This document shows, piece by piece, positions 1-55,868 of a stretch of 64,000 bases of DNA. The position numbers and the translations under genes were made by a program. The stretch is from positions 1-64,000 of the forward strand of contig NIVC01001011.1 of assembly GCA_002269645.1 (NCBI GenBank), in the 5' to 3' direction. The stretch is from Macrostomum lignano. Its lineage: Eukaryota. The notes beneath the pieces were generated by a model that was given only the letters and a program-made list of their open reading frames with translations, ran no database searches and was not told where the DNA came from. Numbering within the stretch: the stretch's first letter is position 1; each line of letters begins with the position of its first letter.

Positions 1-66
1 TGAGCCAGAGCCCTAATATTCGCACACAATCACTGACCGAGTCCAGTGTGGAAACCCCAATTGCAG

Positions 67-3005
67 TGCACCCGCAAGGTCGCTCTGTTCTTCTCGCAGT
101 ATCGCTGGGTCTGCTGAGCGAGCAGCCGGTCGGCAGTCCGATCGAGACGGGTCCCGACGGAGAGCTGCGAGTCTCCGCCTGCTCCGCTGAGCTCAGGGTC
201 CGACTGGCCGCCGCGGACGGCAGCTCGACGTGCGAGTTCGACGTGAACTCGCGTCGAACGTCTCGAGCTGGCGCGCCGAAGCTGACCGGACGGTTATCCG
301 GACGGTTTATCCGGACGGTCCGCTTGCGTCGTTCATGTTCGCTCCGTTCCACCGAGCCGTGAACCGCTTCTGCGATGCAAGGTCGAAGGAGCCTCAGCTG
401 CAGCACAACGGCATGGTGGACAGTCTGATGAACAGGCAGTGCGACGGGCTGAGCGCAGCTGAAGTGCTGCGGAATCACCGAGACTTCTGGGGAACTCCAG
501 ACGGTACTCGCCAGCACCTGGCGACATAAGTTTCGACGTCGTCGCTGAGAAGTCCAACAGACGCGTAGTTGTCGTCATGGACACCTCTGGTAGCATGAGT
601 GTGAGTTTGGCTTTTTTACAAATACCTTCTTGACTGCAATAGTTGAATTATTTTGTAAGGTTTTTTGAAATCATGAAATTATTTCACTATAGGGACTCAG
701 AATTGCGATGATGATCAGCGCCGTGAACCAGTTTCTACTGGAAATAATCGAAGACGGTTCCGAATGCGCTTTGATCAGCTTTACAAACAGACATTCGGTT
801 CTGTCAAATTTTGTAAGCATTCAGTCAAGAAGAGACCGAGAACGCCTGTCGAGTCTTGTGTCGAGACTCCATGCTAACGGAGGAACGTGCATTGGAGGGG
901 CCGTTTCCGCAGCAGCTTCCGTAATTCACAAAGCTGTTAATGTCAGGATTTGTATTGAATTTGTATTAAGCATGCAGACTTTGTATTTTAGATGCTAGGC
1001 TATCACGGTCCGGCTTCTGCATCTGCTACAGGTCAGATAATTCTTCTCTCTGATGGCGTAGAAGGCTGTCCCGGACGGCTTAACAGCATGGTTAGCTTCC
1101 TGGCTCATAGCAGCCTTGAGGTGGTGTCCATTCGCTACGGTGACAAAGCCGATTCGCGAATGGACCGATTGGCGGAGGTTACTGGCGGCCAGAAGTTCTT
1201 CGGTGGCACGTCAATCGCTGACAGCAGCGGCCTAAGACTGGCGCTGGGCGCTACGACAACCGCGATCGACGAGTCAAAGAGGACATTGACGGTGGGCTTG
1301 AATAGATAATTGCTTTTCATAATTTGTAAATGCACAAAAGTGACTGTGATTTTAAGTTCTTTTTTAATTTTTTTACAGCTCACCTCGGAAGAGATCGGCA
1401 GTAGATTCGTGCGTCGAAGGTTTAACGTCGACGAGTCAGTCAGACGCGACCTGGTGTTCCGAGTGACAGTGCCATCAAACACGGGTGCCGTGACGCAGCT
1501 TCGGCTGCTGCTAAATGCGCCGTCGGGTCGTGAGTTCGGCTACAGAAACCGCTCTGACATCTACGAAGCGAATGCAGCGATTGGGACTGTTGCAATCCGG
1601 GTACCGGACAGCCAAATTCAGGTAAACAAATTAATTTTCATGGCTATTCGCTATTTGATTTTTTTACTCCATTCAGTAACTATTCCGCAAGCAGAAAGGT
1701 ATTTGGATACTGCGAGATGAAGCCAGCGAAAGCCAACCAGAAAGTCACCCGTCGACGGGAGCTGGAGGCTCCATCGTTGTCACGGGACGGTCGTCTGAGG
1801 ATTCCGTTGAAGCTCCCGTAGTCCTAACGGCTGAAGTGCATCCGAGCATCGTTCAAAGAATTTCTGAGGAAACCAAAATTGCCGTCTTTGCTCAGCTACT
1901 CAGAGGTCACACGCCTGTAAGGGGCGGAAGGCTGTACGCCTCAGTGCGGTCAGATTCCAATTTGGTAGCTTCCTTCGATCTCATGGACAACGGTGCTGGT
2001 ATGCTTGGGCTTCATTCGAATAAAACAATTCACGAGCGTTACAGAAAATACAGATACAATTAATACATAATTATATAATACAGGGGCCGATCTGAAGGCC
2101 GGAGACGGCACGTATTCCGCCTACCTGCCTGTCGCTGAACTAAATGAGCCTCGAGACTTCTCTGTCTCAGTGAAGTCACTTTCCCCAGTGAGCCGCGTCA
2201 CATCCGCTGGCAAGGTGACAGTTCGCTATCGAATCCGAGCTTCAACAGGCAGCTGGTCCCACCGCCGAAGGTCATTGACTTCCGAGTGACGGTGAACACG
2301 CTGAACAACTCAGCTGTTCTCATGTGGACTGCAGTAGAAGATCCGACAGTGAAGAATGCATGTAAGTTCTTTTTTGAAGTAGTAGCTGAATCAGTATGTT
2401 TAATAACAATTCTAACTTTTAAGACACCGCATTAACGCCCGAATTTCAGCCGCAAAGTACGAGATCCGGTACTCCAGCTCTCGCGAGCAGCTCATTAAAA
2501 ACTTCTCAACTTGCCCGATTCTGACGGTTCTGTCCGAAGGTCTCGGAGCTCCGGGCTCGACTGTGCAGCTGAACGCGTTTCATCAGCTCGCAGGCCGCGG
2601 CGCCGTCTTTGTCGCTGTCTCGGGCGTCTCCGCGCTCAACGTCAGCGGGCCGCAGTCAAATCTGATCGGCGTCGACCTGACTCCGCCCTCGTGACGCAGC
2701 TGACGCACATCGGACTGCTGCCTGTCGGAGACGGGATGGGCGCGACGGAGCCTCCGTCTAGAATGAGCGTTCCAGGCCTGATTGTCGGTGTGACAGCCTC
2801 GGTGGCAGCTGCAGCCGGTCTGGCCTACCTGTCGATGGTGCTGCACCGCAGGGCAAGCTCGGCTCAACCAGCTTCGCTGACTAAACCAGCCGACACCGAC
2901 ACGAAGCAAGGCAAGGCACCAAGGTCGCAGAGTGCCAGCAATGTCTCTGTTCGCTATGCCGACGAGTTTTTCGACGGTTCCACTTTGCTCACACCGGCAA
3001 TTTGA
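67..3005 (+). pseudogene. CLCA: CLCA-like gene, copy 1 (5'-truncated by the window edge; multiple frameshifts: pseudogene or sequence errors)
   Basis: Same exon series as copy 2: Cys-rich domain (ASFMFAPFHRAVNRFCD), vWA with MIDAS (VVVVMDTSGSMS, GGTC, ILLSDG), DNGAGADLKAGDGTYSAY, FN3-like segment and a C-terminal TM (LIVGVTASVAAAAGLAYLSMVL). Indels relative to copy 2 at ~72, ~110, ~285-310, ~510, ~2230 and ~2690. Confidence 0.85.
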
Positions 3006-3639
3006 ACGAGCCGTGGAAAGAATGGAAAACAAAAAGTTCGTTTTTATCTGTTGTAGTGACGAGGAGAAATTTATTGCTTTTTTAATAATGAGTTGGTTGG
3101 TATCCTTTTTCCCAACTCAATGCGACTAAGCATGGATTGAGAGTTCGTATAAAAACAGGGACAATTAACTGTCTTTTAGTTGTCCCTGATAAAAAACTTC
3201 AATATATATGATTACGAAGGTATTAAATTTAATACTTTTTTGTATTCAGAATTACGTTTATGTAAGTGAAAAGTTCGATTTTTTTGACATACTTGCCACC
3301 AGCAAAAGTTTAACAACTACGAACTATAAAATTGAGAAAGTCGACTACTTATTTAGCGTTTATTCAGAACTTTCTGTATCGTTTTATTCGGAGAGATTTT
3401 TTTTCATTTTTTTCATTTTCTAATCGGTCTGTGCTCTCAAGAAATTTAAATTCAATTCAAACTACCATTTGCTTCGACTCTGTAGCATTTATCTATTTGT
3501 TTAAGTTATACAGTACAAGCCCGTAAATGATTGTGTTGCATTCGGATTTGAGCATATATTCACGGAATTACGCTACGCCTTATACTGAAGTATTATGAGC
3601 ACTAGTACGAGCGTAGTAGTAATAAATAAATGTCACATA

Positions 3640-3790
3640 TACGAGGCAGTAGTAGTCGTAGTGGTAGTAGTAGTAGTAGTTGTTGTGTTGTTGTTGTTGT
3701 AGTTGCAGTAGTAGTAGGAGTAGGAGTAGTAGTAAGATTAGTAGTAGTAGTAGGAGTAGTAGTAGTAGGAGTAGTAGTAGTAGTCGTCGT
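3640..3790. repeat. Degenerate (TAG/GTA/GTT)n trinucleotide microsatellite
   Basis: Directly visible; it generates spurious poly-T/V/S ORFs. Confidence 0.9.
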
Positions 3791-4012
3791 TTTTTGGACT
3801 TTTCGAATGAACATTATTGTTCCCATCCATAAATACTCGTAGCAACTACTGATTTTGGTGAAACAGGAGGCGCGGCCACAGTCATCAACTGATAGCTTAC
3901 CAGTACGATGGAATTGACTTCCTACTAAATTGCCGGTGTATGATAGTGACAAACTGCTAACTATAATTTAGGAAAGCTCCTTGTTTAGATAAGCAGCAAT
4001 CTGAGACAAACA

Positions 4013-4401
4013 CCCTAGAGGACATTCTGTTTCTCAAACTTAGCAGATCTTTTCTCTGTGCCATTCTTAGCAGATTTTCTCAATCTGCTCGGTTCTTGCA
4101 GGATCTTCTAAGATGGGAGGTAAATTTGTTTTATTATTCATTTGGCTAAAGTGTTCTAGCTGAAATATATTTCTTTTATGACAAAAAGGGACAATAAATT
4201 TAAGAAAATATGCGATTCGAAGCTATAAAAAGATATAAAAGCTAAGATCTTGTACCATGTAGCAAGTCGCCCAGATCTGGTAAGTTTACCTAAGTATTAT
4301 TATAGCGAAGATCTTGCACGTTCTTGCAAGTACTTGCGCAGCAACCCAAGAAGATAGATCACAAGATCTGCTAAGAATCAACAAGTCAATGTCTTTTAGG
4401 G
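4013..4401. mobile_element. MITE-like element with imperfect ~40-bp terminal inverted repeats
   Basis: Left CCCTAGAGGACATT...CTTAGCAGATCT versus right AGATCTGCTAAG...AATGTCTTTTAGGG. No clear TSD. Confidence 0.45.
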
Positions 4402-4636
4402 CATTAACTTTCTAGGTTTACAAAGCTGGAAGTGATAATTGCAAAGCTGGCTAGAATCATCACAATGCAATGGGGGGACAGTGATGAAACGTAAACATAC
4501 TAAACTTACTATCTGCGTGTACATGCATAAATAAAAGTATAATTAGCTGCGGTTTCTTCATTATTTTAAGTTCTAGAAATAAGTTATAAGAAAATCGACC
4601 AAATATTTTGTTAGCCTCGTTTTATCACTGACCAGG

Positions 4637-7600
4637 ATGCAGCTAAGAACGCTGTTAGTGCTTCTGCTTGCTGCACTGGAGCTGTCCGAGGCTCAGCAGG
4701 ACACGGAGCTGCATCTGCAATCCAACCAGTTCCACCGGCTGCTCATCTTCGTAGAGGATCACCGAACTGGCCAGCCGCCTGTCGGTCAATCGCGCCACCT
4801 GATTGAGAAGATCAAGGTGAGAATCAATTAAGGTCTTAACAAGAAGTTCATGCACAAACGTCACTTAAGGATGAGTCACAGGTGCTCAATCAATCCGCAG
4901 AAAGGATTTAATGACGCCTCCAGGCTGCTGCAGAACTTGACCGCTGCCGTTGGCCGCCCGATGAGGCTCGGCAGCGCCAGCGTCCTGGTGTCCGCCAGAC
5001 TCGGCCGCGAGCTTCGAACCGCCGGACTGCGCGTCGGAGACGCCCGGTGGCAGCGCCGGAACCGAGCCGACTTCGTCGTCACTCACGAAGTCGACGCCGA
5101 TACCGAGGGCTCGGTCGCCATGGAGACCGGATGCGGCAAGCCCGGCAAGAAAGTCGTCATGCAGGATGCGAGCTTCATGAATGACTCAAACAGCATCGGT
5201 GAGTGCTCAGTTGGTAATTGGTACTGAGCCAGAGCCCTACTAGTCTCACACAATCAACTGACCGAGTCCAGTGTTGAACCCCAATTGCAGTGCACCGCAA
5301 GGTCGCTCTGTTCTTCTCGCAGTACCGCTGGGGTCTGCTGAGCGAGCAGCCGGTCGGCAGTCCGATCGAGACGGGTCCCGACGGAGAGCTGCGAGTCTCC
5401 GCCTGCTCCGCTGAGCTCAGGGTCCGACTGGCCGCCGCGGACGGCAGCTCGACGTGCGAGTTCGACGTGAACTCGCGTCGAACGTCTCGGGGCTGCGCGC
5501 CGAAGCTGAGCGAGTCGCAGCCGGACGGTCCGCTTGCGTCGTTCATGTTCGCTCCGTTCCACCGAGCCGTGAACCGCTTCTGCGATGCAAGGTCGAAGGA
5601 GCCTCAGCTGCAGCACAACGGCATGGTGGACAGTCTGATGAACAGGCAGTGCGACGGTCTGAGCGCAGCTGAAGTGCTGCGGAATCACCGAGACTTCTGG
5701 GGAACTCCAGACGGTACTCGGCCAGCACCTGGCGACATAAGTTTCGACATCGTCGCTGAGAAGTCAAACAGACGCGTAGTTGTTGTCATGGACACCTCTG
5801 GTAGCATGAGTAGAGTGAGTGACTTTAGCTTCGAGAACTCAATTCTTTGTGGCGAGTGTGCTGAGTATGAGGACCCTAAGCTAATATGCAACCAATTGTT
5901 AGATCTACGAGCTATCGGCATCTCAACAATCGACTAATGTCATTCAAATTTTCGGCTTTGATTTTTAATCGCGCTGACTGAAATTACATATATTGTATTA
6001 ATTCATTTATTTAAATCATTAGGGAAATCGGTTGACTATGATGAAGAGCGCAGTCAGCCAGTTCCTTATGGAGATTCTTGAAGATGGCTCCGAATGCGCA
6101 TTGATCAGCTTCACGAATGGGCATCAATTGCTTTCCGGATTCACGAAAATTAGGTCCAGGGAGGACAGAGAGAATTTGTCCAGACTGGTTGAAGCATTGA
6201 ATGCGTCAGGAAGCACCTGTATTGCTGGAGCTGTCCGTGCAGCTGCATCTGTGAGTACTAAGGATATAGCAGATATGTACGTACATGTACCAGTACGTAC
6301 GCTCGTATATATCCCTCAGGCACTTTCACCAAGAAAATACGAGCCAGCAAATTTGATTGCGTTTTGCAGCTCCTTGGCTATAAGAACTCGGCCGGGCCAT
6401 CTGCGACGACTACTGGACAAATCATTCTTCTTTCTGACGGTGAGGAAGGCTGCAATGGGAGAGGAGGTCTGAACGGCCTCATCAACTCATTGTCCGATTC
6501 GAGCATTCAAGTGGTCTCCATTCGCTACGGAGACTCCGCTGAAATGCTAATGGACAGGCTAGCCGACGCGACAGGCGGTCAAAAGTTTTTCCAAAGCACA
6601 AACATCTTTGATGCCAGCGGACTGCGACTGGCTCTGGGCGGGACAATCATGGAGCTTGAGGAGTCCAAGAGGTCGCTGACGGTGAGCTGTGCTGAAATAC
6701 TGTTTGAACTCTGTTGATTGTTAGTTTATCTATATGCTGACGATATGGATTGCTTCTGAATTGATTTTCTCAAATTGCGGAAGTGTGCAACGAAGTCTTT
6801 ACCACACCTAGACCGTATTTATAATCCTTTTGGCAGCTGATCTCTGAAGTTATCGAAGGCCGCCTGACGCGTCGCAGGTTCTACGTTGACCACTCGGTGC
6901 GGCGAGACCTCGTGTTCCGGGTGTCTGCACCGGCCAATCTTCGTAGAGTGCAGCAGCTTCGACTGGTGCTGACGTCTCCGTCAGGAGCGAACTTCAGCTA
7001 TCGAAATTCTTCAAGTACATATGAAATCAATGCTAAGCTCGGAACCATTGCGATCAGGGTTCCTGACTTGTACATTGAGGTAAGCCGAATCCAGCTGTGG
7101 CTGATGCCCATGCAGTCCGTGAAGTTTATAAAGTAGCGCAATTGCCACTCATATGGACACTTCAGAACGGTACGTGGACACTAAGAAACGAATACAACTC
7201 ATCGGATGTCGGATTTGTCAGCAGCGATGGCGGCTTCATCGCTGTGACTGGAGAGCAGCTGACAATGCCACTGAAGCCCCCGTTGTTCTCACCGCTGAGG
7301 TCAGTCCGAGAAAAGTTGACAAAATCTTTGTAAACACCACAATTGTCGTGTACGCTCGTCTGTTGAGAGGTCATTCGCCCGTGACAGCTGGGAAATTGTT
7401 TGCCACTGTGAAATCCGATGCAGAACTGGTTGCCACTGTTGATTTGAGTGACAATGGAGCTGGTAAGGGAGTAAAGCATAAGAAAACATAATTGCATTGT
7501 ACTTTGCACCTTTGAAGCAAAAAAATTATACAACTGATTCTTGCGCAATTTAGGAGCCGATCTGAAGATCAGAGATGGCACCTACTCCGCCTACCTGCCC

Positions 7601-8489
7601 ATCGATAAACTCAACGAAGCTCGCGACTTCTCCGTCTCGGTGACGTCACTGTCGCCTGTGAGTCGCGTCGCACCTGCTGGCAAAGTCACAGTTGATAAGG
7701 TGAATGCAGGATTCAACAGGCAGCAAGTGCCACCGGCTAAGGTGATCGACCTGAGAGTGACAGTGAATGCGATGGACCAAACAGCCATGTTAATTTGGAC
7801 GGCGATGGAAGATCCGGTCAGACCTAATACCTGTGAGCCGCGTCTTGCTCTGGTTGGAAATATATCAATGTAAAGTTTGTAATTCAGCGAAATTCCTTCC
7901 ATTTTTGGTATCCCTGTTTATTCCAGCTGTCAGCTATCAAATTAGATACTCAAAATCGCGTAGTCAGTTGATTGACAACTTTTCAAAGTGCAAAAAACTG
8001 AGCTCTGTGTCCAGTGGTCTGACCGGCCCGGACTCCACAATCGAGATGAACATCTTCTCTCTGCTGTCAGATAAAGGCGCCGTGTTTCTCGCCGTCGCCG
8101 GCGTCTCATCCGCCCGAGTCGTCGGACTGCAGTCTAACATCGTCGGCGTTGACGTGACGCCACCATCGGCTTTGGAGCTGAGTAGGCTGGAGAAGCTCGG
8201 TTTGAATGTCGACGGCATTCACCTGCCGGCCGGTACGGCTGACTTCTCCGCCGTAGTGGCGGGAGTGTGCGCCGCAGTGGCGGCTGTGAGTAGTCTCGTT
8301 ACTCTGTCGCTGGTGCTGCAGAGACGGCTGGGCCCGATGGCGATGTTTGCCTCGGCTGGAGCAGATACAGGTCAAGCAGTGGGCCAGATGACCCTCAGCC
8401 GTGCGGCGGCGATGCCTCAGCAGGTGTGTGTGGACGAGAGCGACTTTACTAATGATGTCTACGATGCTGTCGCCTTCGTGAACGACTAA
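4637..8489 (+). CDS. CLCA: CLCA-like (calcium-activated chloride channel regulator family) type I membrane protein, copy 2; 9 exons, one -1 frameshift in exon 7 (~7255)
   Basis: Exons 4637-4816, 4901-5198, 5291-5814, 6023-6250, 6370-6681, 6837-7079, 7166-7462, 7554-7832, 7927-8489, all GT-AG and phase-compatible. Signal peptide MQLRTLLVLLLAALELSEA; N-terminal CLCA motifs (CGKPGKKVVM, YRWG); MIDAS DTSGS; DNGAGAD...DGTYSAY; VPPAKVIDLRV...LIWTA (FN3-like); TM VVAGVCAAVAAVSSLVTLSLVL. Confidence 0.88.
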
Positions 8490-9579
8490 AAGGAAAGCTC
8501 TAAAGAGAAGAAGTCGTCCTCATTAAGAGTTTGTCGTTGAAAGTGTTTTGTTGAACAATATTTGAAATTGAAATTGGCTGTTTTTTGAAATTAAGAGCTG
8601 AAGAAAAGAGAATTTTCAAGATATTTATCTATTTAACGCACGACATTTTTTTGCAGTTTGATTGGAGAATCGTTGGTTTAAATTTGTAACAGCCTTACTA
8701 TAACAAATCAAAGTATTTTACTATACGCTCGTACTACTGTTGCTCCAAAGTCTATGCTAATCTGCTTAACGAGAAAAGATTAGGTCTAATATTACCTGTT
8801 CCGTACTGTGTCGGAAAGTCTATAATTATATACTAGAACATATAAATTTATTTATTTATTTAAAGCCAAATTTTCAGATACTCATGCCCGTAATTCAGAG
8901 ATCAATGTTTTCACATTACATCGGATAACTACGTGATACGTCGGCTGTACATGCAGCGGTGTAATGTAAAAGTATCCCATTTGTTAGCGACATCGATAAG
9001 GCGTCGGATTGTTTTTCGGATATCCAGTCGGCATACTAGTATTTAATAATAATAGCATTCATGCCATCCATTTTAAGAAGCTGCAACTTCTTACCTTATT
9101 GGGTATATTTATACTGTATCGTCTATTATCTAGCTATAGTTATACTCCAGGGTATTATATGATTACAGTAATTTAATAAATCTAACAGTCTTTTCCGTTA
9201 ATAAATGTCAATTTATTCAGGATATAAGAACAAAAATTATCAGTGAATCAAATGCGCTTAAGAATAGCGCAAGGTATCCGTTTTAATTTCTTTACAATGC
9301 AGATATTGACGCCTCTTTTGGTTTGACGAGATTAATTAGTATTTTAACTTTCAGCACTATTATTAGCATCACTACTCAACTATAACTTTATGTCTACGGT
9401 CATTCTGCAGTAAGAGACGTAAATTAGACGCCCATGGAAATATTTTGATCGAGTTAGGAAGATTATTTTTATTCATAATTTTAGGGACTATGTAGTGTAA
9501 AATAGCGCGCCACACTATTCCACATGTAATGAACCAGCTCCAATAACTCAATGCACGCCAGTCTAGAACAGTTCTAGAG

Positions 9580-12500
9580 ATGGCCGACTCGCTGAAACGC
9601 TGGTGGCAGAGGCGACTCTGCATCAAGAGGGCCAGACGGCACAACCTGCAGGACGCGAGGAAGAGGCCGAGTCTTCAACGACAGCGAAATTCCAGTCTAA
9701 AATGTCAGCAACAACAAGCTGAAGCAGTCGGCAACAGTGACCCGGCAGGCAGGGATGCTGCGTCTGTCCCAGGGACAGCAATGGAAAGCGGCGGCGCCGA
9801 AACGGAGCCGCAGCCTCCACCTCCTCCGCCGCAGCCACTGCCGTTGCAGCCGCAGCACCTCCAGATGAGTCGCACCACTTTTACATCGGTGCTGCCTCGG
9901 GTGGCCAGCCGGCTGCACACAATTCACGAAGAGGAGGACGGCGGCAGTCGGAGCGCCTCCAACGCGTTCGGCTGGGCCAGCAGTCAAGAGGAGGCGACCG
10001 CGAACGACTATTGTCCGTCGGACGACTTGGACTCGCGAGCCATCTTCGATTCCGACCAGTCCGATCTGGACCGAGAGTTGATTGAGTGCAGAAATCAAAC
10101 AAGAAACAATGCTAAGCTTGAGTCCGAAGATGCAGATCCAGCAGGGCAACTGAAGGCCGAAGCGCCCGCCGCTGTGGCTATGGCTGCGGTAGCTGAGAAC
10201 TTTGATGACGATGCAGACGAGGCTATGGAGGCTGCGACTATTTCGGAAGCGTTCACAACAGCCATGACTCGAACAGGAACCGCCACCACCACCTGCACCA
10301 CGCCGTCACCGTCTATCGCTAGGCAGAACTCGCCGCTGCCTGAACGATCGTGGATTCCCAGCAGGCGATGTCGGCGAAACAATCACCACGGGCATGGCAG
10401 AACTTCGAAGCCCAACTGCGGGCGCGGCGCCGACATCGGATGGCCCAACGTCCGGCTCGAGAAGGTGACAATCCAGCCGCATTCAACAGCTACTTGTGGC
10501 CGTCGTATCAGCTGCCTTGAGACCCGCCGCACGTCTGGCCGGGGCAAGTGCGACGAGTTGAATTTCGATATGGCGGAAGAAGACTACAGCGGTAATCGTC
10601 TGCGAAATCCGATCCGAGAGCCGTCGGCATCCCCGGAGCAGTCAAGTGAGGCCGTCTTTGGCATCGCCTGCGCCCTGCAAACCTCGGACTTGGAGTCGTC
10701 GTTTCCATGCTCATCTTCTGAGAAGACCAACAGCAGTTTACAAAAAATCAGTGGCAGCAAAGCCGCCAAAAATTTTACGAATTTGTCCAATGTCTACGGA
10801 CAGCCGACAGCGGGTTTGGCTGCGAATGCGGCTGAGTCAGTATCTGCTGGCAAACGGCAGTCGTCTCGCATCACTCGAATTTGGCTCGACGTGAAAAGTT
10901 CAAGCAGCGACAGAACTGCGGAGCAGAACGAAAAAGCAAGGGAGAGTCGACGAAAAACAAAGAAGGAAGAGACAAGGGAAGAGGAACCGGAAACAGAGCC
11001 GGAAACGGAGCCAGAGACGGAGCCGGAAGTAGAGAAGGAGCATGAAGAACCGGAAGAGCAAAAAAACCCTTCGCCACCACCTCAGAATGTTGAGCGGAGA
11101 AATTCTTCAGAAAAGAAAATCAAAGTAAAGCGAGAGCCTCGAAGCAGCCATCATAGTCAGCAGGAAGACTCGGGTGACGACGAACACGTCTTTGTTTACG
11201 AAGCCACGGTGGCGTTGGATACTCCGGCTAACGCCGATAACGCTGAGAAACCAGCTAAGGAAATCAACAGCTCGGTAAGTTGTAAGTCGGTCTGTAAAAG
11301 TTTATAGTTACCGCTGTAAATAGTTTGATCTCTAAAATCTTTGAGTTGGTTTTTATTGGTTGATTTGCACCTGTGCTGAAATTCTCAACAACCCAGCGAG
11401 CAGGTGGTGACAAGCAGGACACCCAGCCAGAGAGACCGCAGGACTGTGCCGGCTGTTTCGGCTCCTTTGAGAACGGGCGACAACCGCGTTGCAACTGCTG
11501 CTGCACGTCTGTACGCTGCTGTTGCCGCCATGACGACCATCCGATGGGGAGGCTGCCGGATGCCGCGTCATCTGGCTGCGGCGGATGCCATCAGCGCTGC
11601 TCGTGCTGCTGCTGCCACAACTGCAGCACTCGGTCGCCGATAGGCTCTGCCTGCGTCTCCGGCCACAGGTGCTGTAACAACCGCAGCCAGCATCAACGAG
11701 GTCATAGGACCATTGGTTGCTCCAGTGCCTACGGTGGCTGCTGTTGCGGCTGCTGCTGCTCAGGCTACCAGCCTCCAACGCGCTACATTAATCCGCACTC
11801 GATGGCGCAGTACGACCTGGCCGAGCCGTGGATTTGGCAGCCGCCCGTGTCGCCAGAAGAGCACCGACAGCAGCTTGTCAACGTGTCGGAGGGACAAGCA
11901 AAAAAGACAATAGCTGCAGCTGAAAGTCTATTAAAATCGGCTTCCAGGCAGCCTGCGCAAGAATGCGATGTGACATGCGACAAGTATGACATGGGTTTAC
12001 ATGGTTCTTTGTGATAGGAGAGTGTAAATGACGTCTTGCCAGACTGTCGATAGTTGCTAGATGGTCTAACTGTTTTCGCTTTAAATCTTTTACTAGATCT
12101 CGCAATCCAGCCGTGCGCCCCAAAAAACCCACCACCCCCAATAACACGCAATCCAGCCGTGCGCCCCAGAAAACCCACCAACCCCAATAACACGCAATCC
12201 AGCCGTGCGCCCCAGAAAACCCACCAACCCCAATAACACGCAATCCAGCCGTGCGCCCCAAAAAACCCACCAACCCCAATAACACGCAATCCAGCCGTGC
12301 GCCCCAGAAAACCCACCGACCCCAATCGAACACAATCAAACCAGTGCCTAAAAAGATGCACTACTAGAGCAAATCTGCAGCACAACGCAGTCCTTTTGTA
12401 CCCACAATTTTTCCAGAACTGACATTCAACAACAAGCTGCGTCACTACAGGATGGAGGGCAGCGGCTCGAGCAGCCAGAAAAACATCCTGCCTCTACTAG

Positions 12501-19315: not shown

Positions 19316-22300
19316 TCAGGGAGCCACCGTGGTGGCATTGAGAGTCGGATTGGCTGCGGCAGTCTCTGGCTGACTTGACCGCGGCAGGTGCATCGAAGGC
19401 ACGCTGACACTCACTGGGGGCATGCCGGGCAGACTCAGCTGGGTGCTGACCGCGGGAAAATCAGTCAGCGGCTGCTGCGTGGGCGGCGGGGGCGGCGGCG
19501 GCAGAGGCTGCTGCTGCTGTTGCGGAGGCGCAGGCGGCGGTGGCAACGGCTGATCGTGCGAGTGACCGTGACCTCCGCTATACAGAGGCTGCTGCTGCTG
19601 CTGCTGGTGAACAGTTGGACTACCGCTGGAGGAGCTCAGCGGAACCTGTTAATTTGAAGAAAAAATAAATTTGTGCCATTTTCAGATTTTCGAAACTACG
19701 ATGTGCCAGCGCGGCCCAGGCTCGATTCCAAGTGCAGTCACATTAACTTGGAACTCTAAATAAATTGGAATCTCGGCTTGGCTCTGCTTGTGCAATGAAC
19801 GGCCTTGAGGAGGCCCAATACCAAAGGCATAGATAGAGTGTGTGCCTGTGCCTCTATCCGGTTGTGCCACAATGTCACTTAAAGAGCGCCAGGGTGCACA
19901 CAGCCACATGGACTAATAGAAAATATGATAAACTATGCGTCAAGACAGGTGAGTAAATTTGTGTGAACTTTTACTTACATCGGCAAATCCGTTGCCATTG
20001 CTGACCGATCCAGTCCGGTCGGAGTCGGACAGACTGTCCGGAGACTGGCTCAACGGAATCCGGTGCAAATAGCCGTAGCCAATATTGCAGCCGAGCAGGC
20101 CCTCGCCGCCCCAAGCGGAATTGGGCACAATTGTCAGCTCGCGACACGAATCTGACACGGTGCTGTACACGTACAGTTTCAGGGGCTTGTTGTCGTGAGC
20201 CTCAATCATGGCAAACAGATCTTCAGCGTCCTAGGTGTTCGAATATTAATATTATTTCGTAGCTTAAAAAATCAATTTTTTAAACGTAAGAAAACTGTTG
20301 GAGTTAATCAGTAGTATTGAATGCCACTTACAGAAAATTGACTGAGAATATGTTTGACTTAGCAAGTATGTTACACTCTATGTGCCTTGCGGGTTGGCTG
20401 TCATTGGCAGTCTTAATAAAGAAATTTAGGCAAGCGCGTCGCCACCAGGGGGACACCCCGGTAAAAGCCATCATGATGGGGGACATGTCAATAGAGCCTG
20501 TGGCGCTAAAAAAGTGCCTGTGGCGCTAAAATGAGTGCCTGTGGCGCTAAAAAAGTGCCTGTGGCGCTAAAATGAGTGCTTGTGGCGCTAAAATGAGTGC
20601 CTGTGGCGCTAAAAAAGTGCCTGTGGCGCTAAAATGAGTGCCTGTGGCCCTAAAAAAGTGCCTGTGGCGCTAAAATGAGTGCCTGTGGCGCTAAAATAGT
20701 GCCTGTGGCGCTAAAATGAGTGCCTGTGGCACTAAAATGAGTGCCTGTGGCGCTAAAATGAGTGCCTGTGGCGCTAAAATGAGTGCCTGCGGCGCTAAGA
20801 TGAGTGCCTGCGGCGCTAAAATGAGTGCCTGCGGCGCTAAGATGAGTGCCTGCGGCACTAAAATGAGTGCCTGCGGCGCTAAAATGAGTGCCTGTGGCGC
20901 TAAAATGAGTGCCTGCGGCGCTAAAATGAGTGCCTGCGGCGCTAAAATAGTGCCTGTGGCGCTAAAATGAGTGCCTGTGGCGCTAAAATGAGTGCCTGTG
21001 GCGCTAAAATAGTGCCTGTGGCGCTAAAATGAGTGCCTGTGGCGCTAAAATGAGTGCCGGTGGCGCTAAAATAGTGCCTGTGGCGCTAAAATGACTGCCT
21101 GTGGCGCTAAAATGAGTGCCGGTGGCGCTAAAATAGTGCCTGTGGCGCTAAAATGACTGCCTGTGGCGCTAAAATGACTGCCTGTGGCGCTAAAATGAGT
21201 GCCGGTGGCGCTAAAATAGTGCCTGTGGCGCTAAAATGAGTGCCTGTGGCGCTAAAATGAGCGCTGACAACACCGACTTCTCAAAATAACGGACATGCAG
21301 AAATGCAGTCATGTACATGATTGTACATGTTGAATTCTCGGCTTTGTCCCTTTACCATAAAATACATGGCGACACCCCTGGATTTAGGTGACAAAGCCAT
21401 ATGACATATGCATGAATATTGAATTGATAGCTCACAGATGTACCCCCTGTTTGTAAAAATAGAAGTGAATACTTAAAAAAAAATCAGCATTTGATAAGCA
21501 GTTTATCATCGAAACGTTTTGATCCGGTAAATCTTTTTACTAAGCCTTGCGGGCAATGAATGAAATTCTCTCGTGCTCCCCTCTCATGGCTGAGTCGTAC
21601 ACGACAGGGCCCCCGGCCCCCTGGACCAATTTTCATGCACAGAAGCTCAAAACGAATGCAGCAGCGGTCGTGTGGCGCGGGAACTGCTCCGCCTCCTGCT
21701 CCCAAGTCCCATTCGGTACAATAAAACCAGTGACCTTCCCTGGATAGGTCCCAGATTGCAGTTCGGCAGGCTGGCTACTACCGTAACACATTTCTGAATC
21801 AAATTGATCCCAATCAGCAAGCATTGCTAATCACCTGCAGCAGGGCATCGGCGCCAATAATATAGTCCGAATCTGACACGAAACCGGCCAGAGCTGCCGG
21901 CGAGTTCGGCTGCACGTCCAACACGTGCCAGACGTTCTCGTTGGCGCCCTGGAACGAGCAGAATCGAATACTGACGCCTAGGAGTCCCTGGCCGCCCCAG
22001 CCGTCTGATGGAACAATGGTGACCTCACGGCAGACCTGAGTCTTGCTGCTGTACACCAGAGCTTGGACAGGCTTGTCTTTGTTAGCAGAGAGCAGCTCTC
22101 GGAGCTTGTCATTGTCTTCGTTCTAGGGTGTTATAAAAAATGGGTTGATGAAATCAAATATAAAAATGACTCTTTTGCATATTACGCTACTATGAGTAGA
22201 TTTCAGTAGCCAAAATGTAACTTACCAATCTAGTATTGCCGATAGCAATAATGAAATCAAAGAACGCTTCTAGGCCGGCCTTGTGACCTGGCGAGTTGTC

Positions 22301-25300
22301 CTGGACCTAAGCAGAACCAGAGATAAGGAATACATAATAAATTAATTTAGGGTATGTTGTAACATGGCAAATTTAGTATGGAAGTTAGTGGCATACATTT
22401 CATTCTGTTAATCTAATTCAATTCAAATTTGCACCAAAAAGACTTTATTTAAACAAAATATAAGCTACTTTCAACACCTTAATTTTTTAAATACTGAAAT
22501 TAGTACTTTACTATCCAAATTTGCTTCTATGGTGCTTAAACTTTTTGTTCTTAATATTAATTGAGCAGTTTTGAAACATACTTGCCCTGGTCATCTTATC
22601 ATCTAGTTAGATGGCCAGGTATATTGTATACATATTAATTTGAGACTTCATATTTATTTCCTTGTTTTTAAACGTGGAGGGAAGCATGGGCAACCCTCTA
22701 AAAGTTTGTGGAAAGCTGTTTGAGAGCAGGAATCCCAGCAAGAAAGATCTAGAGTCCGTAAGTCTTAGAAAAGGCTTCAAGATAGGAACAAGTCTAGGCA
22801 GCTTCATTATTACCAAGGGCAAATCTTTTATTAGGTAAACAAAAAGCTAAGAAAGCTTCTCCAATAGGGTTACAAGCCACAAGGCTTCTTCATTACCTAG
22901 CACTAATAAGTTTGGAATTTCTAAGTAGCAGTCTAGGAGCAGAAAGACCCAAGTCTTAAATAGAAATGGCTTGAATAATTGAAGTGAGTCCAGACACATT
23001 ATTTACCAAAAGTCTCCTAATAGACAGGAAGACTGGCTATGTATAGGTCTACAAGCCTCAAGGCTTATTCACTATCTAGCTTAGGTAAGCCTAGGCCAAG
23101 TGGTTAGAGATAGGAGAGGCACTAAGGAGCAAAGGGACCATTGGACTCAGCCAGTTTTCCCCAATTTGGGATGAACATCAACCTCATTAGTAGTTCTAAT
23201 AGACTGATTATATGTAATGCATAAAGAAAAATTCTTATTTCTATATTGACAAATGGTCTTCTTAAAAATATTGAAAAATTGTTGGCAAACATCTTTAAAT
23301 GTTAGTTAATATATTTAATTTATAAAATTAAATCTTAAGCACTAGCCCTATAAGAATTTTCAAAATAACTTAATTTTATATTCCTATGCAAATACAAAAG
23401 TATAAAGCAAAATGCAAAAGCATTCATACATGCGCAACTGCTGGCCGACCTGGCCGATCCGGCCACCGTAAATCGTGGCTGACCAGGGGTAAGTCACAAA
23501 ATTGAGTCAACCAAAAACAGAAAAACACAAGAACCAAGAAAGGCAAGAGGAAAGCAAAAGAAAGTGCAGTTCAGGGAAAATGGTGAAGCAAAAGAAAAAC
23601 TATTCGCAAAAGAAGCAAACTAAGTTGTAAAAATAATCAGGTAAGTCGCAAAAAGGATCAGGTAAGTCGCAAAAGAAGCAAACTAAGTCGCAAAAAGGAT
23701 CAGGTAAGTCGCAACAGGAATCAGGTAAGTCGCAAAAGAAGCAAACTAAGTCGCAAAAAGGATCAGGTAAGTTGCAAAAGGGTTAGGTAAGTCGCAAAAA
23801 GGATTAGGTAAGTCGCAAAAAGGATCAGGTAAGTCGCAAAAAGGATCATGTAAGTCGCAACAAGAATCAGGTAAGTCGCAAAAGGATCAGCTAAGTCGCA
23901 AAAGGATTAGGTAAGTCGCAAAAAGGATTAGGTAAGTCGCAAAAAGGATTAGGTAAGTCGCAAAAAGAATCAGGTAAGTCGCAAAAGGATCAGCTAAGTC
24001 GCAAAAGGATTAGGTAAGTCGCAAAAGGGTTAGGTAAGTCGCAAAAGGATTAGGTAAGTCGCAAAAGGGTTAGGTAAGCCGCAAAAGGATTAGGTAAGTC
24101 GCAAAAAGGATTAGGTAAGTCGCAAAAAGAATCAGGTAAGTCGCAAAAGGATCAGCTAAGTCGCAAAAGGATTAGGTAAGTCGCAAAAGGGTTAGGTAAG
24201 TCGCAAAAGGATTAGGTAAGTCGCAAAAGGGTTAGGTAAGTCGCAAAAGGATTAGGTAAGTCGCAAAAAGGATTAGGTAAGTCGCAAAAAGGATTAGGTA
24301 AGTCGCAAAAAGAAGCAACTAAGTCGCAATAAGAGGGAAGTAAGTCACAATCAGAGGCAATCAGGGGGTAGTAGGTGCAAGTGTGGCAGGAGAGCAAAAA
24401 CAGAATAGAAGCCTTCAACCACAGACAAGATCTTTGAAATCAGAAGCCCGCGTCCACAGTTTCCCATTGATTTCTTAAACTCTGGAGCAGGGGTTGGCAA
24501 ACTCCGGCTTGTGAAGCCCCTCTATCTGGCCCTCGCCCCTCGGGTTCTTTGAAACTTCCTAACCAGCAAGGTTGGTGTCTCTTCAACTCTCATCTCTCTC
24601 TTCTTCTCTACCTTGCCTCCCCTCTTCTCTCTCTCCCCCCTTTTCCCTCTTCTCTCTCCTCTCATTTTTACTCTCCTCTCTTCCCCCCCTTTCTCTCTAC
24701 CCTTTCTCCTCAATGCCCTCTTCTCTCCTCTTATCTTCAGCAAAAATATGTGCATATTTTCTTACTTCAAAGTAGAGGGAATAGAATATTAGAGATAAGC
24801 AAACAGAGGGGAGGCGAGCGATGCGATGGGAGAAAAGATAGAAGAGGAGAGAAAAGCTGAGGGAGGAAAAACAGATGAGAGAGAAGAGGAGATTAGAGGA
24901 AAGAGGAAAGAAAAGATGATGGATGAGATCAGAAGAGAGGAAAGAGGAAAGAGGAGAGAGTAGATGAGAGAAGAGAGGATAAAGAGGAGATGAGAGGAGA
25001 GTGAAGAGAGGAGAGATGAGAGAGTAGAAATGAGAGATAAGATGAGAGAGTAGAGTGGAGAGAGACGAGAGGGAAGATAAGATGAGAGAGTAGAGTGGAA
25101 TGGAGAGATGAGAGGAGATAAGAATGTAGAGAGGAGACAGAAGAGATAGGAGAGGAGAGGAAAGAGAGAAGGGATAAGGGATGAGAGAGAAAAGAAAAAG
25201 AGGATGAGAAGATTGAGGAATGGAGAGAATTTGCAAAGGCCTCAACTCAAATCTTAGTTTAACATGCATTACTCCCATCTTTGCCTTTTTCCTAACTGTT

Positions 25301-39406: not shown

Positions 39407-47480
<8,074 letters not shown>

Positions 47481-52524: not shown

Positions 52525-53022
<498 letters not shown>

Positions 53023-55469: not shown

Positions 55470-55868
<399 letters not shown>

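What the first reader, a model, noticed from the sequence alone, without database searches (positions are those of the whole stretch)
67..8489. Tandem CLCA paralogs that appear protease-dead and also lack the autocleavage loop, while keeping MIDAS and a TM anchor
Seen: where canonical CLCAs read HEWAHLRWGVFDE (HExxHxxxGxxDE zinc motif), both copies read LFFSQYRWGLLSE (copy 2 at 5308-5346). All zinc ligands and the catalytic Glu are replaced, yet the YRWG anchor, Cys-rich domain, DxSxS/T/D MIDAS, FN3-like region and TM are retained. Between ...DGTYSAY...FSVSVTS and SRVAPAG...VPPAKVIDL (~7620-7690; same in copy 1) only a few residues remain. In vertebrate CLCA1, as I recall its sequence, this interval holds a loop of roughly 50 aa containing the self-cleavage site. 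Known: CLCAs self-cleave through this zinc domain, and the vWA domain engages TMEM16A. Inference: coordinated loss of enzyme and substrate site points to an uncleaved, membrane-tethered pseudo-protease, possibly an adhesion or ligand-binding receptor, rather than random decay.
Basis: partly seen in the sequence, partly recalled or inferred. Interest (0 to 1): 0.72.

Follow-up and report, generated by a model that had tools for sequence, protein, structure and literature searches.

The report
Protease-dead, loop-less flatworm CLCA gene pair
Two neighbouring genes of the flatworm Macrostomum lignano encode membrane-anchored relatives of the CLCA self-cleaving metalloproteases that have lost both the zinc catalytic site and the loop that is normally cut, yet remain under purifying selection. 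Loss of the catalytic motif is already known in this family, so this is a modest variant.

Summary
It reads LFFSQYRWGLLSE at 5308-5346 where CLCAs read HEWAHLRWGVFDE. Five residues replace the 34-106-residue loop that carries the self-cleavage site. The MIDAS, the conserved cysteines, the Met-turn methionine, the FnIII-like domain and one transmembrane helix are kept.

Copy 1 (67-3005, its 5' end off the window) does not read the motif in frame as assembled. The window carries ±1 homopolymer indels in both copies. Each site is intact in another M. lignano assembly, so they are most likely assembly errors.

The genes are not pseudogenes. dN/dS is 0.23 between the copies and 0.15-0.43 between homeologs, dead domain included. 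The GenBank models of copy 1 belong to an RNA-seq-based annotation.

The dead motif plus the short hairpin is shared by at least three diverged M. lignano paralog lineages and one transcript from an unidentified organism.

Substituted HExxH motifs are common and were described in 2013; here 27 of 114 representatives have one. Loops under 34 residues occur only in such proteins. The best reading is an uncleaved, membrane-tethered pseudoprotease that acts through its VWA MIDAS. The binding partner is unknown. I rate it a new variant of a known kind, of moderate interest.

The parts
67..600 (+). Copy 1 exon 3. It encodes the second half of the metalloprotease-like domain and the Cys-rich region. 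Exons 1-2 lie off the window.
   Evidence: Acceptor AG at 65-66 and donor GT at 601-602. 97.9% nt identical to copy 2 exon 3. Indels at 71, 106, 285 and 509 relative to NIVC01003199.1.
85..122 (+). Copy 1 stretch homologous to the LFFSQYRWGLLSE motif. It is 38 nt instead of 39 and is out of phase as assembled.
   Evidence: M. lignano proteins P0001 and P0176-P0178 read FFSQYRWGLL[S/N]EQ here.
288..312 (+). Tandem duplication ccggacggtt(t)at in copy 1 exon 3. After indel correction it is an in-frame change, RTVIRTVY in place of ESQ.
   Evidence: Present in NIVC01003199.1 and absent (15-nt gap) in homeolog loci L002 and L003.
693..920 (+). Copy 1 exon 4 (start of the VWA domain). An alternative donor lies at 941/942.
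   Evidence: P0001 uses the downstream donor.
992..1291 (+). Copy 1 exon 5 (rest of the VWA domain)
1379..1621 (+). Copy 1 exon 6 (BSR domain)
1695..1998 (+). Copy 1 exon 7 (BSR domain and start of the Inhibitory-domain homologue)
2084..2361 (+). Copy 1 exon 8 (Inhibitory-domain homologue and start of FnIII). One base is missing at 2230.
2155..2223 (+). Copy 1 beta6-hairpin-beta7, DFSVSVK-SLSPV-SRVTSAGKVTV. It stands in place of the loop that carries the cleavage site.
   Evidence: The model has strands 728-737 and 741-752 with pLDDT of about 89-96.
2450..3005 (+). Copy 1 exon 9 (FnIII, stalk, transmembrane helix at about 2769-2843, tail, stop). One base is missing at 2690.
   Evidence: The model has a helix at 909-931.
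4637..4816 (+). Copy 2 exon 1 (ATG, hydrophobic signal-like N-terminus)
4901..5198 (+). Copy 2 exon 2 (first half of the metalloprotease-like domain)
   Evidence: 93.3% nt identical to copy 1 exon 2.
5291..5814 (+). Copy 2 exon 3 (motif helix, Cys-rich region, start of VWA with DTSGS)
5308..5346 (+). LFFSQYRWGLLSE, in the position of HEWAHLRWGVFDE. His156 becomes Leu, Glu157 Phe, His160 Gln and Asp167 Ser.
5791..5805 (+). MIDAS D-T-S-G-S of copy 2
6023..6250 (+). Copy 2 exon 4
6370..6681 (+). Copy 2 exon 5
6837..7079 (+). Copy 2 exon 6
7166..7462 (+). Copy 2 exon 7. It has a 1-nt deletion at 7249-7253: ACTGGAGAGCA against ACTGGGAGAGCA.
   Evidence: P0006 and P0155 read VTGRAADNATE through this site.
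7554..7832 (+). Copy 2 exon 8
7625..7693 (+). Copy 2 beta6-hairpin-beta7, DFSVSVT-SLSPV-SRVAPAGKVTV. The five-residue connector is at 7646-7660.
7927..8489 (+). Copy 2 exon 9 (FnIII, stalk, transmembrane helix at 8244-8318, tail, stop)

Best explanation
The two genes are tandem paralogs in Macrostomum lignano. They belong to a flatworm clade of CLCA-family pseudoproteases.

Each gene encodes a type I membrane protein with these parts, in order:
- a signal-like N-terminus;
- a metzincin-like domain kept as a scaffold, without zinc ligands or a catalytic base;
- a Cys-rich region;
- a VWA domain with a complete MIDAS;
- a BSR domain;
- the homologue of the CLCA1 Inhibitory domain, in which the roughly 45-residue beta6-beta7 extension is reduced to a five-residue hairpin (in CLCA1 that extension holds the scissile bond and plugs the active site);
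- an FnIII-like domain, a stalk, a transmembrane helix and a short tail.

Shown here: the anatomy, homology to the family, intact reading frames once two assemblies are reconciled, and purifying selection that includes the dead domain.

Inferred: the protein cannot cut itself and has nothing to cut at the usual place. It therefore stays a single chain on the cell surface. Its activity is non-catalytic, most likely metal-dependent binding of a partner through the MIDAS. That is how the CLCA1 VWA domain is reported to engage TMEM16A. Dead ADAMs and the calcium-channel alpha2delta subunits act in a comparable way, as receptors or auxiliary subunits. The partner is unknown.
For: Family and domains:
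- Pfam CLCA_N and VWA hits.
- The CLCA1 VWA crystal structure matches by sequence and by fold, with TM 0.87 normalised to the target and rmsd 2.4 A.

Motif:
- The motif replacement is aligned unambiguously through the conserved RWG..E.
- There is no HExxH in any frame.

Loop:
- The connector is 5 residues, against 34-106 in 79 motif-intact representatives.
- The role of that loop in CLCA1 comes from 10.1101/2025.10.18.683246.

Model:
- AlphaFold2 model of P0001: mean pLDDT 77.9, pTM 0.76, ectodomain mostly above 85.
- It has a helix at 162-178 where the active-site helix lies, a tight beta hairpin at 728-752 and a transmembrane helix at 909-931.

Selection:
- Copy 1 against copy 2, exons 4-9: dN/dS 0.23.
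- Between homeologs: 0.15-0.38 over the dead domain plus Cys-rich region, and 0.24-0.43 over the rest.
- There is a deficit of non-synonymous changes, with p from 0.01 to 7e-9.

Conservation of the state:
- Shared by paralogs P0152, P0007 and P0004, which are 25-43% identical to P0001.
- The dead domain is no less conserved than the other domains.

Frameshifts and expression:
- The frameshifts are assembly-specific homopolymer indels.
- Both public assemblies are PacBio drafts with many errors.
- The copy 1 GenBank models (PAA78007.1, PAA56473.1, PAA52687.1) belong to an annotation derived from an RNA-seq-guided transcriptome.
Against: - There is no direct evidence on cleavage, zinc binding, location or binding partner.
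- Copy 2 has no gene model in the GenBank annotation of the three loci fetched, so its expression is not shown.
- dN/dS of 0.3-0.4 for copy 2 indicates only moderate constraint.
- Gene conversion over exons 2-3 could keep the dead domain similar between the copies without selection. The homeolog comparison argues against that explanation, though it rests on few changes (6 non-synonymous against 13 synonymous for copy 1).
- The reconciled frames mix bases from two draft assemblies. No reads were examined.
- A conserved basic cluster, RRRF, at the start of the BSR domain could be a convertase site.
Confidence: 0.65

Rival explanations
1. The two copies are decaying pseudogenes. On this reading the lost motif, the missing loop and the frameshifts are all part of the same erosion.
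For: As assembled, copy 1 has six frame-disturbing indels and an early stop, and copy 2 has one frameshift. Copy 2 is not annotated in GenBank at the three loci fetched.
Against: - Every frameshift site has the frame-preserving length in another assembly of the same locus, which is 99.7% identical with 23 gap positions against 4 mismatches. That assembly has its own indels where the window is intact.
- Copy 1 exons 4-9 translate identically to P0001 over about 630 residues apart from the two indel sites and one residue near the C-terminus.
- Homeolog loci L002 and L003 have frame-preserving exon lengths for copy 1.
- dN/dS is 0.15-0.43.
- All splice sites are canonical.
Confidence: 0.05
2. The proteins are still processed, or still catalytic, by another route. 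Another protease such as a proprotein convertase might cleave them at a different site, or other residues might perform hydrolysis. In that case they would be shed or two-chain proteins like canonical CLCAs.
For: - A basic cluster (TRRRF in copy 2, VRRRF in copy 1) is conserved at the start of the BSR domain.
- Glu168 of the DEY motif and the Met-turn methionine are retained.
- The metalloprotease-like domain is under constraint.
Against: - All three metal ligands and the general base are replaced by Leu, Phe, Gln and Ser, which cannot bind zinc.
- No HExxH or H...H occurs anywhere in the protein.
- The basic cluster lies in or directly before a predicted beta strand of a well-folded domain.
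- In P0152 it is QRRLEF, so it is only partly conserved.
Confidence: 0.1
3. They are structural or secreted-matrix components, for example of mucus, rhabdite or adhesive secretions, rather than signalling receptors or channel regulators. The hydrophobic C-terminus would serve only for transient anchoring before release.
For: - CLCA1 is a major non-mucin mucus protein (abstract of PMC6851300).
- The family has expanded in M. lignano into at least five paralog groups.
- Paralogs P0152 and P0004 end directly in a hydrophobic stretch with no cytoplasmic tail.
Against: Both window genes have a transmembrane helix followed by RR and a 50-65-residue tail. There are no expression or localisation data for or against.
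Confidence: 0.15

Closest known systems
Vertebrate membrane-anchored CLCAs (CLCA2, CLCA4) and secreted CLCA1
   Same: - The domain order is the same: metalloprotease-like domain, Cys-rich region, VWA with MIDAS, BSR, Inhibitory domain, FnIII-like domain, and a C-terminal transmembrane helix as in CLCA2 and CLCA4.
- The conserved cysteines, the Met-turn methionine and the calcium-site residues of the Inhibitory domain (DNGAGAD...DG.YS) are all present.
   Different: The HExxHxxxGxxDEY zinc motif is absent. The beta6-beta7 extension with the scissile bond and the plug of the active site is also absent. Self-cleavage, and the activation step that depends on it, therefore cannot occur in the same way.
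CLCA_N proteins with substituted catalytic sites (Lenart et al. 2013, PMC3650047)
   Same: They are members of the same family with the HExxH motif replaced. That paper reports 72% motif conservation and about five independent losses. Here 27 of 114 scorable representatives are substituted, including proteins from a sea urchin, Daphnia and a gar.
   Different: - I found no flatworm term (flatworm, Schistosoma, Platyhelminth) in the main text of that paper.
- In the parts of it that I read, the cleavage loop of substituted members is not discussed.
- Most substituted members keep a loop of normal length. The Macrostomum clade has the extreme five-residue hairpin.
Catalytically dead ADAMs (ADAM11, ADAM22, ADAM23); from general knowledge, not tested here
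   Same: They are metzincin-fold ectodomains without a zinc site. They are type I membrane proteins that act as receptors or adhesion molecules.
   Different: They belong to a different metzincin family with different accessory domains (disintegrin, Cys-rich and EGF rather than VWA, BSR and FnIII). They are not homologous outside the protease fold.
Alpha2delta auxiliary subunits of voltage-gated calcium channels
   Same: They are membrane-anchored extracellular proteins whose MIDAS-containing VWA domain binds a channel. They appear among the structural matches through the VWA domain.
   Different: They have Cache domains instead of a protease-like domain. The match covers only the VWA part, with low whole-chain TM scores of 0.14-0.17.

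Membership tests
CLCA family (Pfam CLCA_N, PF08434, plus VWA architecture) | CLCA_N domain scoring above Pfam's gathering threshold | tested here: met
   37.4 bits against a cut-off of 25.6, E 2.5e-9, residues 46-296 of copy 2. The nearest named relatives outside Macrostomum are annotated CLCA1-like or CLCA4-like, from amphioxus, a sea urchin, a hemichordate and a gastropod.
CLCA family (Pfam CLCA_N, PF08434, plus VWA architecture) | VWA domain with a complete MIDAS (D-x-S-x-S, T, D) | tested here: met
   D332, S334, S336, T403 and D442 of P0001 align with D313, S315, S317, T384 and D414 of a mouse-type CLCA and are invariant or nearly so in 74 sequences. Match to PDB 6PYO.
CLCA family (Pfam CLCA_N, PF08434, plus VWA architecture) | BSR, Inhibitory-domain and FnIII-like domains after the VWA domain | tested here: met
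   The alignment is continuous to the PPxxIxDL start of FnIII. The model shows beta-rich domains at 519-872 with pLDDT mostly 80-97.
CLCA metalloproteases ('CLCAsins', a metzincin family) | Zinc-binding and catalytic motif HExxHxxxGxxDEY | tested here: not met
   The sequence is LFFSQYRWGLLSEQ. His156, Glu157, His160, Asp167 and Tyr169 are all replaced. There is no HExxH in any frame.
CLCA metalloproteases ('CLCAsins', a metzincin family) | Met-turn methionine below the active site | tested here: met
   M250 of P0001 aligns with M239 of the mouse-type CLCA (human Met238). 67 of 74 sequences have Met in this column.
CLCA metalloproteases ('CLCAsins', a metzincin family) | Autocatalytic cleavage site in the beta6-beta7 extension of the Inhibitory domain | tested here: not met
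   The extension is reduced to 5 residues, against 34-106 in motif-intact members. The position of the site in CLCA1 (Gly694/Ala695) comes.
CLCA metalloproteases ('CLCAsins', a metzincin family) | Self-cleavage into N- and C-terminal products | not testable with these tools
   This needs protein biochemistry.
Regulators of TMEM16 channels (functional class of CLCA1 and CLCA4) | MIDAS-dependent binding and stabilisation of a TMEM16 channel | not testable with these tools
   Only the MIDAS is shown to be intact. Anoctamin homologues are listed for the M. lignano transcriptome in PMC3447372.

The most novel reading that the evidence does not exclude
The Macrostomum clade would be a natural separation of function for CLCA proteins. 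On this reading an expanded family kept the VWA-MIDAS partner-binding role, for example in TMEM16-type channel regulation or cell-matrix adhesion, and permanently dispensed with proteolysis and autoinhibition. The five-residue hairpin with its conserved SPVSR..SAGK motif would then be a new functional surface, not a scar. More generally, the inhibitory loop of CLCAs would be kept only as long as the protease is active. That would explain why loops under 34 residues occur only in motif-substituted members.
Probability: 0.3. Interest if true: 0.5.

Novelty: new variant of a known kind. Interest (0 to 1): 0.35.

Why it matters
CLCA proteins are studied for mucus disease and chloride-channel regulation. 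It is debated how far their effects need proteolysis.

A clade under selection that lacks both the catalytic site and the autoinhibitory, self-cleaved loop, but keeps the MIDAS, is a ready-made non-catalytic comparator. M. lignano has transgenesis and RNAi tools with which to test it.

The family-wide pattern gives evolutionary support to the recent structural proposal that the loop exists to plug and regulate the active site. In that pattern the loop shrinks only where the motif is lost.

The practical lesson is that apparent frameshifts in M. lignano draft assemblies should be checked against a second assembly before a gene is called a pseudogene.

Tried and rejected
- Word-indexed protein searches found only M. 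lignano proteins and were useless for distant relatives. The exhaustive phmmer search was needed.
- A MAFFT L-INS-i run on 150 sequences timed out. The automatic mode was used.
- A regex measure of the DG.YS to PPxxIxDL spacing missed many sequences. It was replaced by alignment-anchored loop lengths.
- P0003 looks as if it has a 42-residue loop, but the region does not align (GHGTKAS...). It is probably a faulty gene model, so I ignored it.
- The whole-chain Foldseek search was dominated by VWA hits. It could not test the metzincin fold of the dead domain, and no full-length CLCA1 structure was in the PDB copy.
- I first mapped the motif one residue out of register (H to F, E to F, H to Y). 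The column check corrected this to H to L, E to F, H to Q.
- I considered a short intron or alternative splice to explain the copy 2 frame change at about 7253. I rejected it because no in-phase acceptor exists and P0006 reads straight through.
- The source organism of SRR30276804 (P0004) could not be identified with these tools.


Full report
WHAT IS THERE

The first 8.5 kb of the window hold two head-to-tail genes on the + strand, with short GT..AG introns.

Copy 2 is complete. Its nine exons are 4637-4816, 4901-5198, 5291-5814, 6023-6250, 6370-6681, 6837-7079, 7166-7462, 7554-7832 and 7927-8489.

Copy 1 enters the window inside its intron 2. Its exons here are exon 3 at 67-600, then 693-920, 992-1291, 1379-1621, 1695-1998, 2084-2361 and 2450-3005.

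Pfam finds CLCA_N (37.4 bits, cut-off 25.6) and VWA on copy 2. The best database matches are Macrostomum lignano proteins A0A1I8GJS2 and A0A1I8GWG2. The window is 99.7% identical to GCA_002269645.1 contig NIVC01003199.1, so the organism is the flatworm M. lignano. No further CLCA copy lies downstream in the window.

CHECKING THE OBSERVATION

Copy 2 reads LFFSQYRWGLLSE at exactly 5308-5346.

In a 74-sequence alignment anchored by the conserved RWG..E, these residues fall on HEWAHLRWGVFDE(Y). The substitutions are His156 to Leu, Glu157 to Phe, His160 to Gln, Asp167 to Ser and Tyr169 to Gln. Gly164 and Glu168 are kept. The cryo-EM preprint on human CLCA1 identifies His156, His160 and Asp167 as the zinc ligands and Glu157 as the catalytic base. 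No HExxH occurs in any of the six frames of 1-8600.

These features are retained:
- the MIDAS residues;
- four invariant cysteines;
- the Met-turn methionine (Met250 of P0001, equivalent to human Met238);
- the DNGAGAD...DG.YS calcium-site stretch;
- the PPxxIxDL start of the FnIII-like domain;
- one strong transmembrane segment followed by RR.

Five residues, SLSPV, join DFSVSVT to SRVAPAGKVTV. In CLCA1 the corresponding strands are beta6 (Lys674, Arg676) and beta7 (Ser729-Thr731) of the 'Inhibitory domain'. The extension of about 50 residues between them carries the Gly694/Ala695 scissile bond and occludes the active site.

The part that does not hold is 'both copies read'. As assembled, copy 1 has an extra C at 71-73 and lacks a G at about 107. 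This rewrites the motif region, and further indels follow.

ARE THEY BROKEN GENES?

The copy 2 CDS is 3n+2 because one base is missing at 7249-7253. Copy 1 has single-base differences at 71, 106, 285, 509, 2230 and 2690.

Base-by-base comparison with NIVC01003199.1 shows 28 differences in 9.2 kb, and almost all are ±1 changes in homopolymer runs. At every frameshift site in the window, the other assembly has the frame-preserving length. Conversely, it has eight indels of its own in copy 2 exons where the window is intact.

ML2-derived proteins read straight through the sites: RYRNPSF, TPPSVTQL and VTGRAADNATE. Both public assemblies are PacBio drafts. REAPR scored only 32% and 64% of their bases as error-free.

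I took copy 1 exons from NIVC01003199.1 and added one G to copy 2. This gives open frames of 979 and 974 residues. I conclude that the frameshifts are most likely assembly errors. No reads were examined, so this stays an inference.

A 25-nt tandem duplication in copy 1 exon 3 (288-312) is present in both assemblies. After correction it is in frame: RTVIRTVY in place of ESQ, in a loop that also varies among other alleles.

SELECTION

The two copies are 53-72% identical in nucleotides in exons 1 and 4-9. In exons 2 and 3 and the intron between them they are 93-98% identical. This is a gene-conversion tract that covers exactly the protease-like and Cys-rich coding part.

Over exons 4-9, Nei-Gojobori dN/dS is 0.23 (dN 0.375, dS 1.65, close to saturation).

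M. lignano is a neopolyploid with three subgenomes. I fetched the three homeologous loci, L002-L004, and projected their exons onto the reference frames.

| Comparison between homeologs | Exons 1-3 (dead domain + Cys-rich) | Remaining exons |
|---|---|---|
| Copy 1 | 0.15 | 0.24-0.26 |
| Copy 2 | 0.32-0.38 | 0.29-0.43 |

Non-synonymous changes are significantly under-represented, with p from 0.01 to 7e-9. The counts are small: 6 non-synonymous against 13 synonymous for the copy 1 dead domain.

Among paralogs, the dead domain is no less conserved than the other domains. The GenBank models of the three copy 1 homeologs belong to an annotation derived from an RNA-seq-guided transcriptome. Copy 2 has no GenBank model at these loci, so its expression is not shown.

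HOW WIDESPREAD IS THIS STATE?

An exhaustive phmmer search with P0001 found 710 relatives at E of 0.001 or better.

The closest are all M. lignano paralogs: A0A1I8G1G6, PAA58881.1, PAA70808.1, PAA75759.1 and PAA46316.1. One further close hit is a 907-residue ORF on an intronless 2973-nt contig assembled from SRA run SRR30276804, whose organism is unknown.

All of these lack HExxH. Every one that is full-length and alignable in that region has the five-residue connector followed by a conserved [SA]R[VT]x[ST]AGK, although they are only 25-43% identical overall. The state is therefore old and conserved within this clade.

The next relatives are annotated CLCA1-like or CLCA4-like proteins of amphioxus, a sea urchin, a hemichordate and molluscs. 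They have an intact motif or only Asp167 changed to Asn.

| Motif state, 114 representatives scorable for motif and loop | Number | beta6-beta7 connector (residues) |
|---|---|---|
| HExxH...D intact | 79 | 34-106, apart from one alignment outlier |
| Only the third ligand changed | 8 | 35-63 |
| Substituted | 27 | 5, 12, 21, 24, 29 or 32 in eleven of them; normal length in the rest |

The substituted group includes proteins from a sea urchin, Daphnia and a gar. Loops shorter than 34 residues were thus seen only in substituted members. The comparison is not corrected for phylogeny.

STRUCTURE

An AlphaFold2 model of P0001, built with the 74-sequence alignment, has mean pLDDT 77.9 and pTM 0.76. 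The ectodomain is mostly above 85.

The model has these features:
- a helix at 162-178 where the active-site helix would lie;
- a VWA fold;
- beta-rich domains;
- a tight hairpin, with strands 728-737 and 741-752;
- a transmembrane helix at 909-931.

Foldseek against the PDB recovers the CLCA1 VWA domain (TM 0.87 normalised to the target, rmsd 2.4 A). The other matches are VWA proteins such as alpha2delta, ANTXR and complement factor B. No full-length CLCA structure was in the library, so the metzincin fold of the dead domain rests on sequence homology and on the secondary structure of the model.

MOST LIKELY MECHANISM

Shown: a CLCA homologue without metal ligands, catalytic base or scissile loop, with an intact MIDAS and a membrane anchor, under purifying selection.

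Inferred: the protein stays a single chain at the cell surface and works by binding. The MIDAS of the VWA domain is the obvious interaction site, by analogy with the reported CLCA1-TMEM16A interaction. More distantly it resembles dead ADAMs and the alpha2delta subunits. Anoctamin homologues are listed for the M. lignano transcriptome. In CLCA1 the loop plugs the active site, so it has no purpose once catalysis is gone. That makes the joint loss mechanistically sensible.

COMPARISON WITH WHAT IS KNOWN, AND NOVELTY

By homology and architecture these are members of the CLCA family. They fail the two features that define CLCA metalloproteases: the zinc motif and the autocleavage site.

Substituted catalytic sites in CLCA_N proteins were described by Lenart et al. 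2013, with 72% motif conservation and about five independent losses. My sample agrees.

Several things appear to be new:
- the complete removal of the cleavage and inhibitory loop in a dead clade;
- its conservation across an expanded flatworm paralog family;
- the family-wide pattern that short loops occur only where the motif is substituted.

My literature check was limited. One search for Macrostomum plus CLCA returned only a 2012 table of ion-channel homologues. I rate this a new variant of a known kind, of moderate interest.

Noticed in passing
window 1-9200, against NIVC01003199.1 (L004 11289-20489): The same locus in two M. lignano assemblies differs by 23 gap positions and only 4 mismatches in the BLAST alignment. 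Almost all the indels are ±1 in homopolymer runs, and each assembly is 'wrong' at different exon positions. Apparent frameshifts in these drafts are unreliable.
   Followed up: yes
window 1-600 against 5225-5814, and copy 1 exon 2 (L004 10965-11262) against 4901-5198: A gene-conversion tract lies between the tandem paralogs. Exons 2-3 and intron 2 are 93-98% identical, while all other exons are 53-72% identical. The tract covers just the protease-like and Cys-rich coding part.
   Followed up: partly
window 288-312: Copy 1 exon 3 has a tandem duplication, ccggacggtt(t)at. It is present in both assemblies of this homeolog and absent from homeologs L002 and L003. In frame it replaces ESQ by RTVIRTVY. 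The GenBank model PAA52687.1 skips the segment (KLS|PDGP).
   Followed up: partly
L002 (NIVC01000712.1), copy 1 exon 3: One homeolog reads FFSQYRWGLLNEQ. It has Asn instead of Ser at the position of the former third zinc ligand, so that position varies among the homeologs.
   Followed up: no
L002 14423-21069, against window 3157-4627: The spacer between copy 1 and copy 2 is about 6.6 kb in homeolog L002, against about 1.5 kb in the window. This implies an insertion of roughly 5 kb whose nature I did not examine.
   Followed up: no
window 3630-3842: An imperfect trinucleotide repeat (GTT/GGT-rich on the + strand) lies in the spacer between the two genes. It produces spurious poly-Val and poly-Thr ORFs.
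   Followed up: no
window 12100-62600: The rest of the window is packed with minisatellites and microsatellites. Examples are 21-mer x37 at 20496-21261, 28-mer x38 at 28504-29557, 20-mer x53 at 39741-40798, 24-mer x36 at 46078-46947, and (ATAG)n at 41397-42337, 52525-53022 and 55470-55866. Many long 'ORFs' there are translations of repeats.
   Followed up: no
window 40797-41312 and 42342-42758, - strand: Two ORFs look like exons of a Ser/Thr protein kinase. They contain GRGAYGYV...VVVKF, HRDLKDEN and DFG, and they flank the (ATAG)n array.
   Followed up: no
window 9580-11307, + strand: A 575-residue ORF, low in complexity and rich in acidic, Ser and Pro residues, lies downstream of copy 2. In homeolog L003 a gene with no Pfam hit (894 residues) is called at the corresponding place, 21263-24282.
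   Followed up: no
L003 and L004, 1-6066, - strand (upstream of the window): The upstream neighbour of copy 1 in the other assembly is a gene with FERM and SPRY domains on the opposite strand.
   Followed up: no
L001 (Logan SRR30276804 contig, 2973 nt): An intronless contig with a 907-residue ORF encodes a relative 25-28% identical to P0001, with the same dead motif (YEFGQFRWGLRPEH) and the same five-residue hairpin. It is probably a transcript of another species. The organism could not be identified here.
   Followed up: partly
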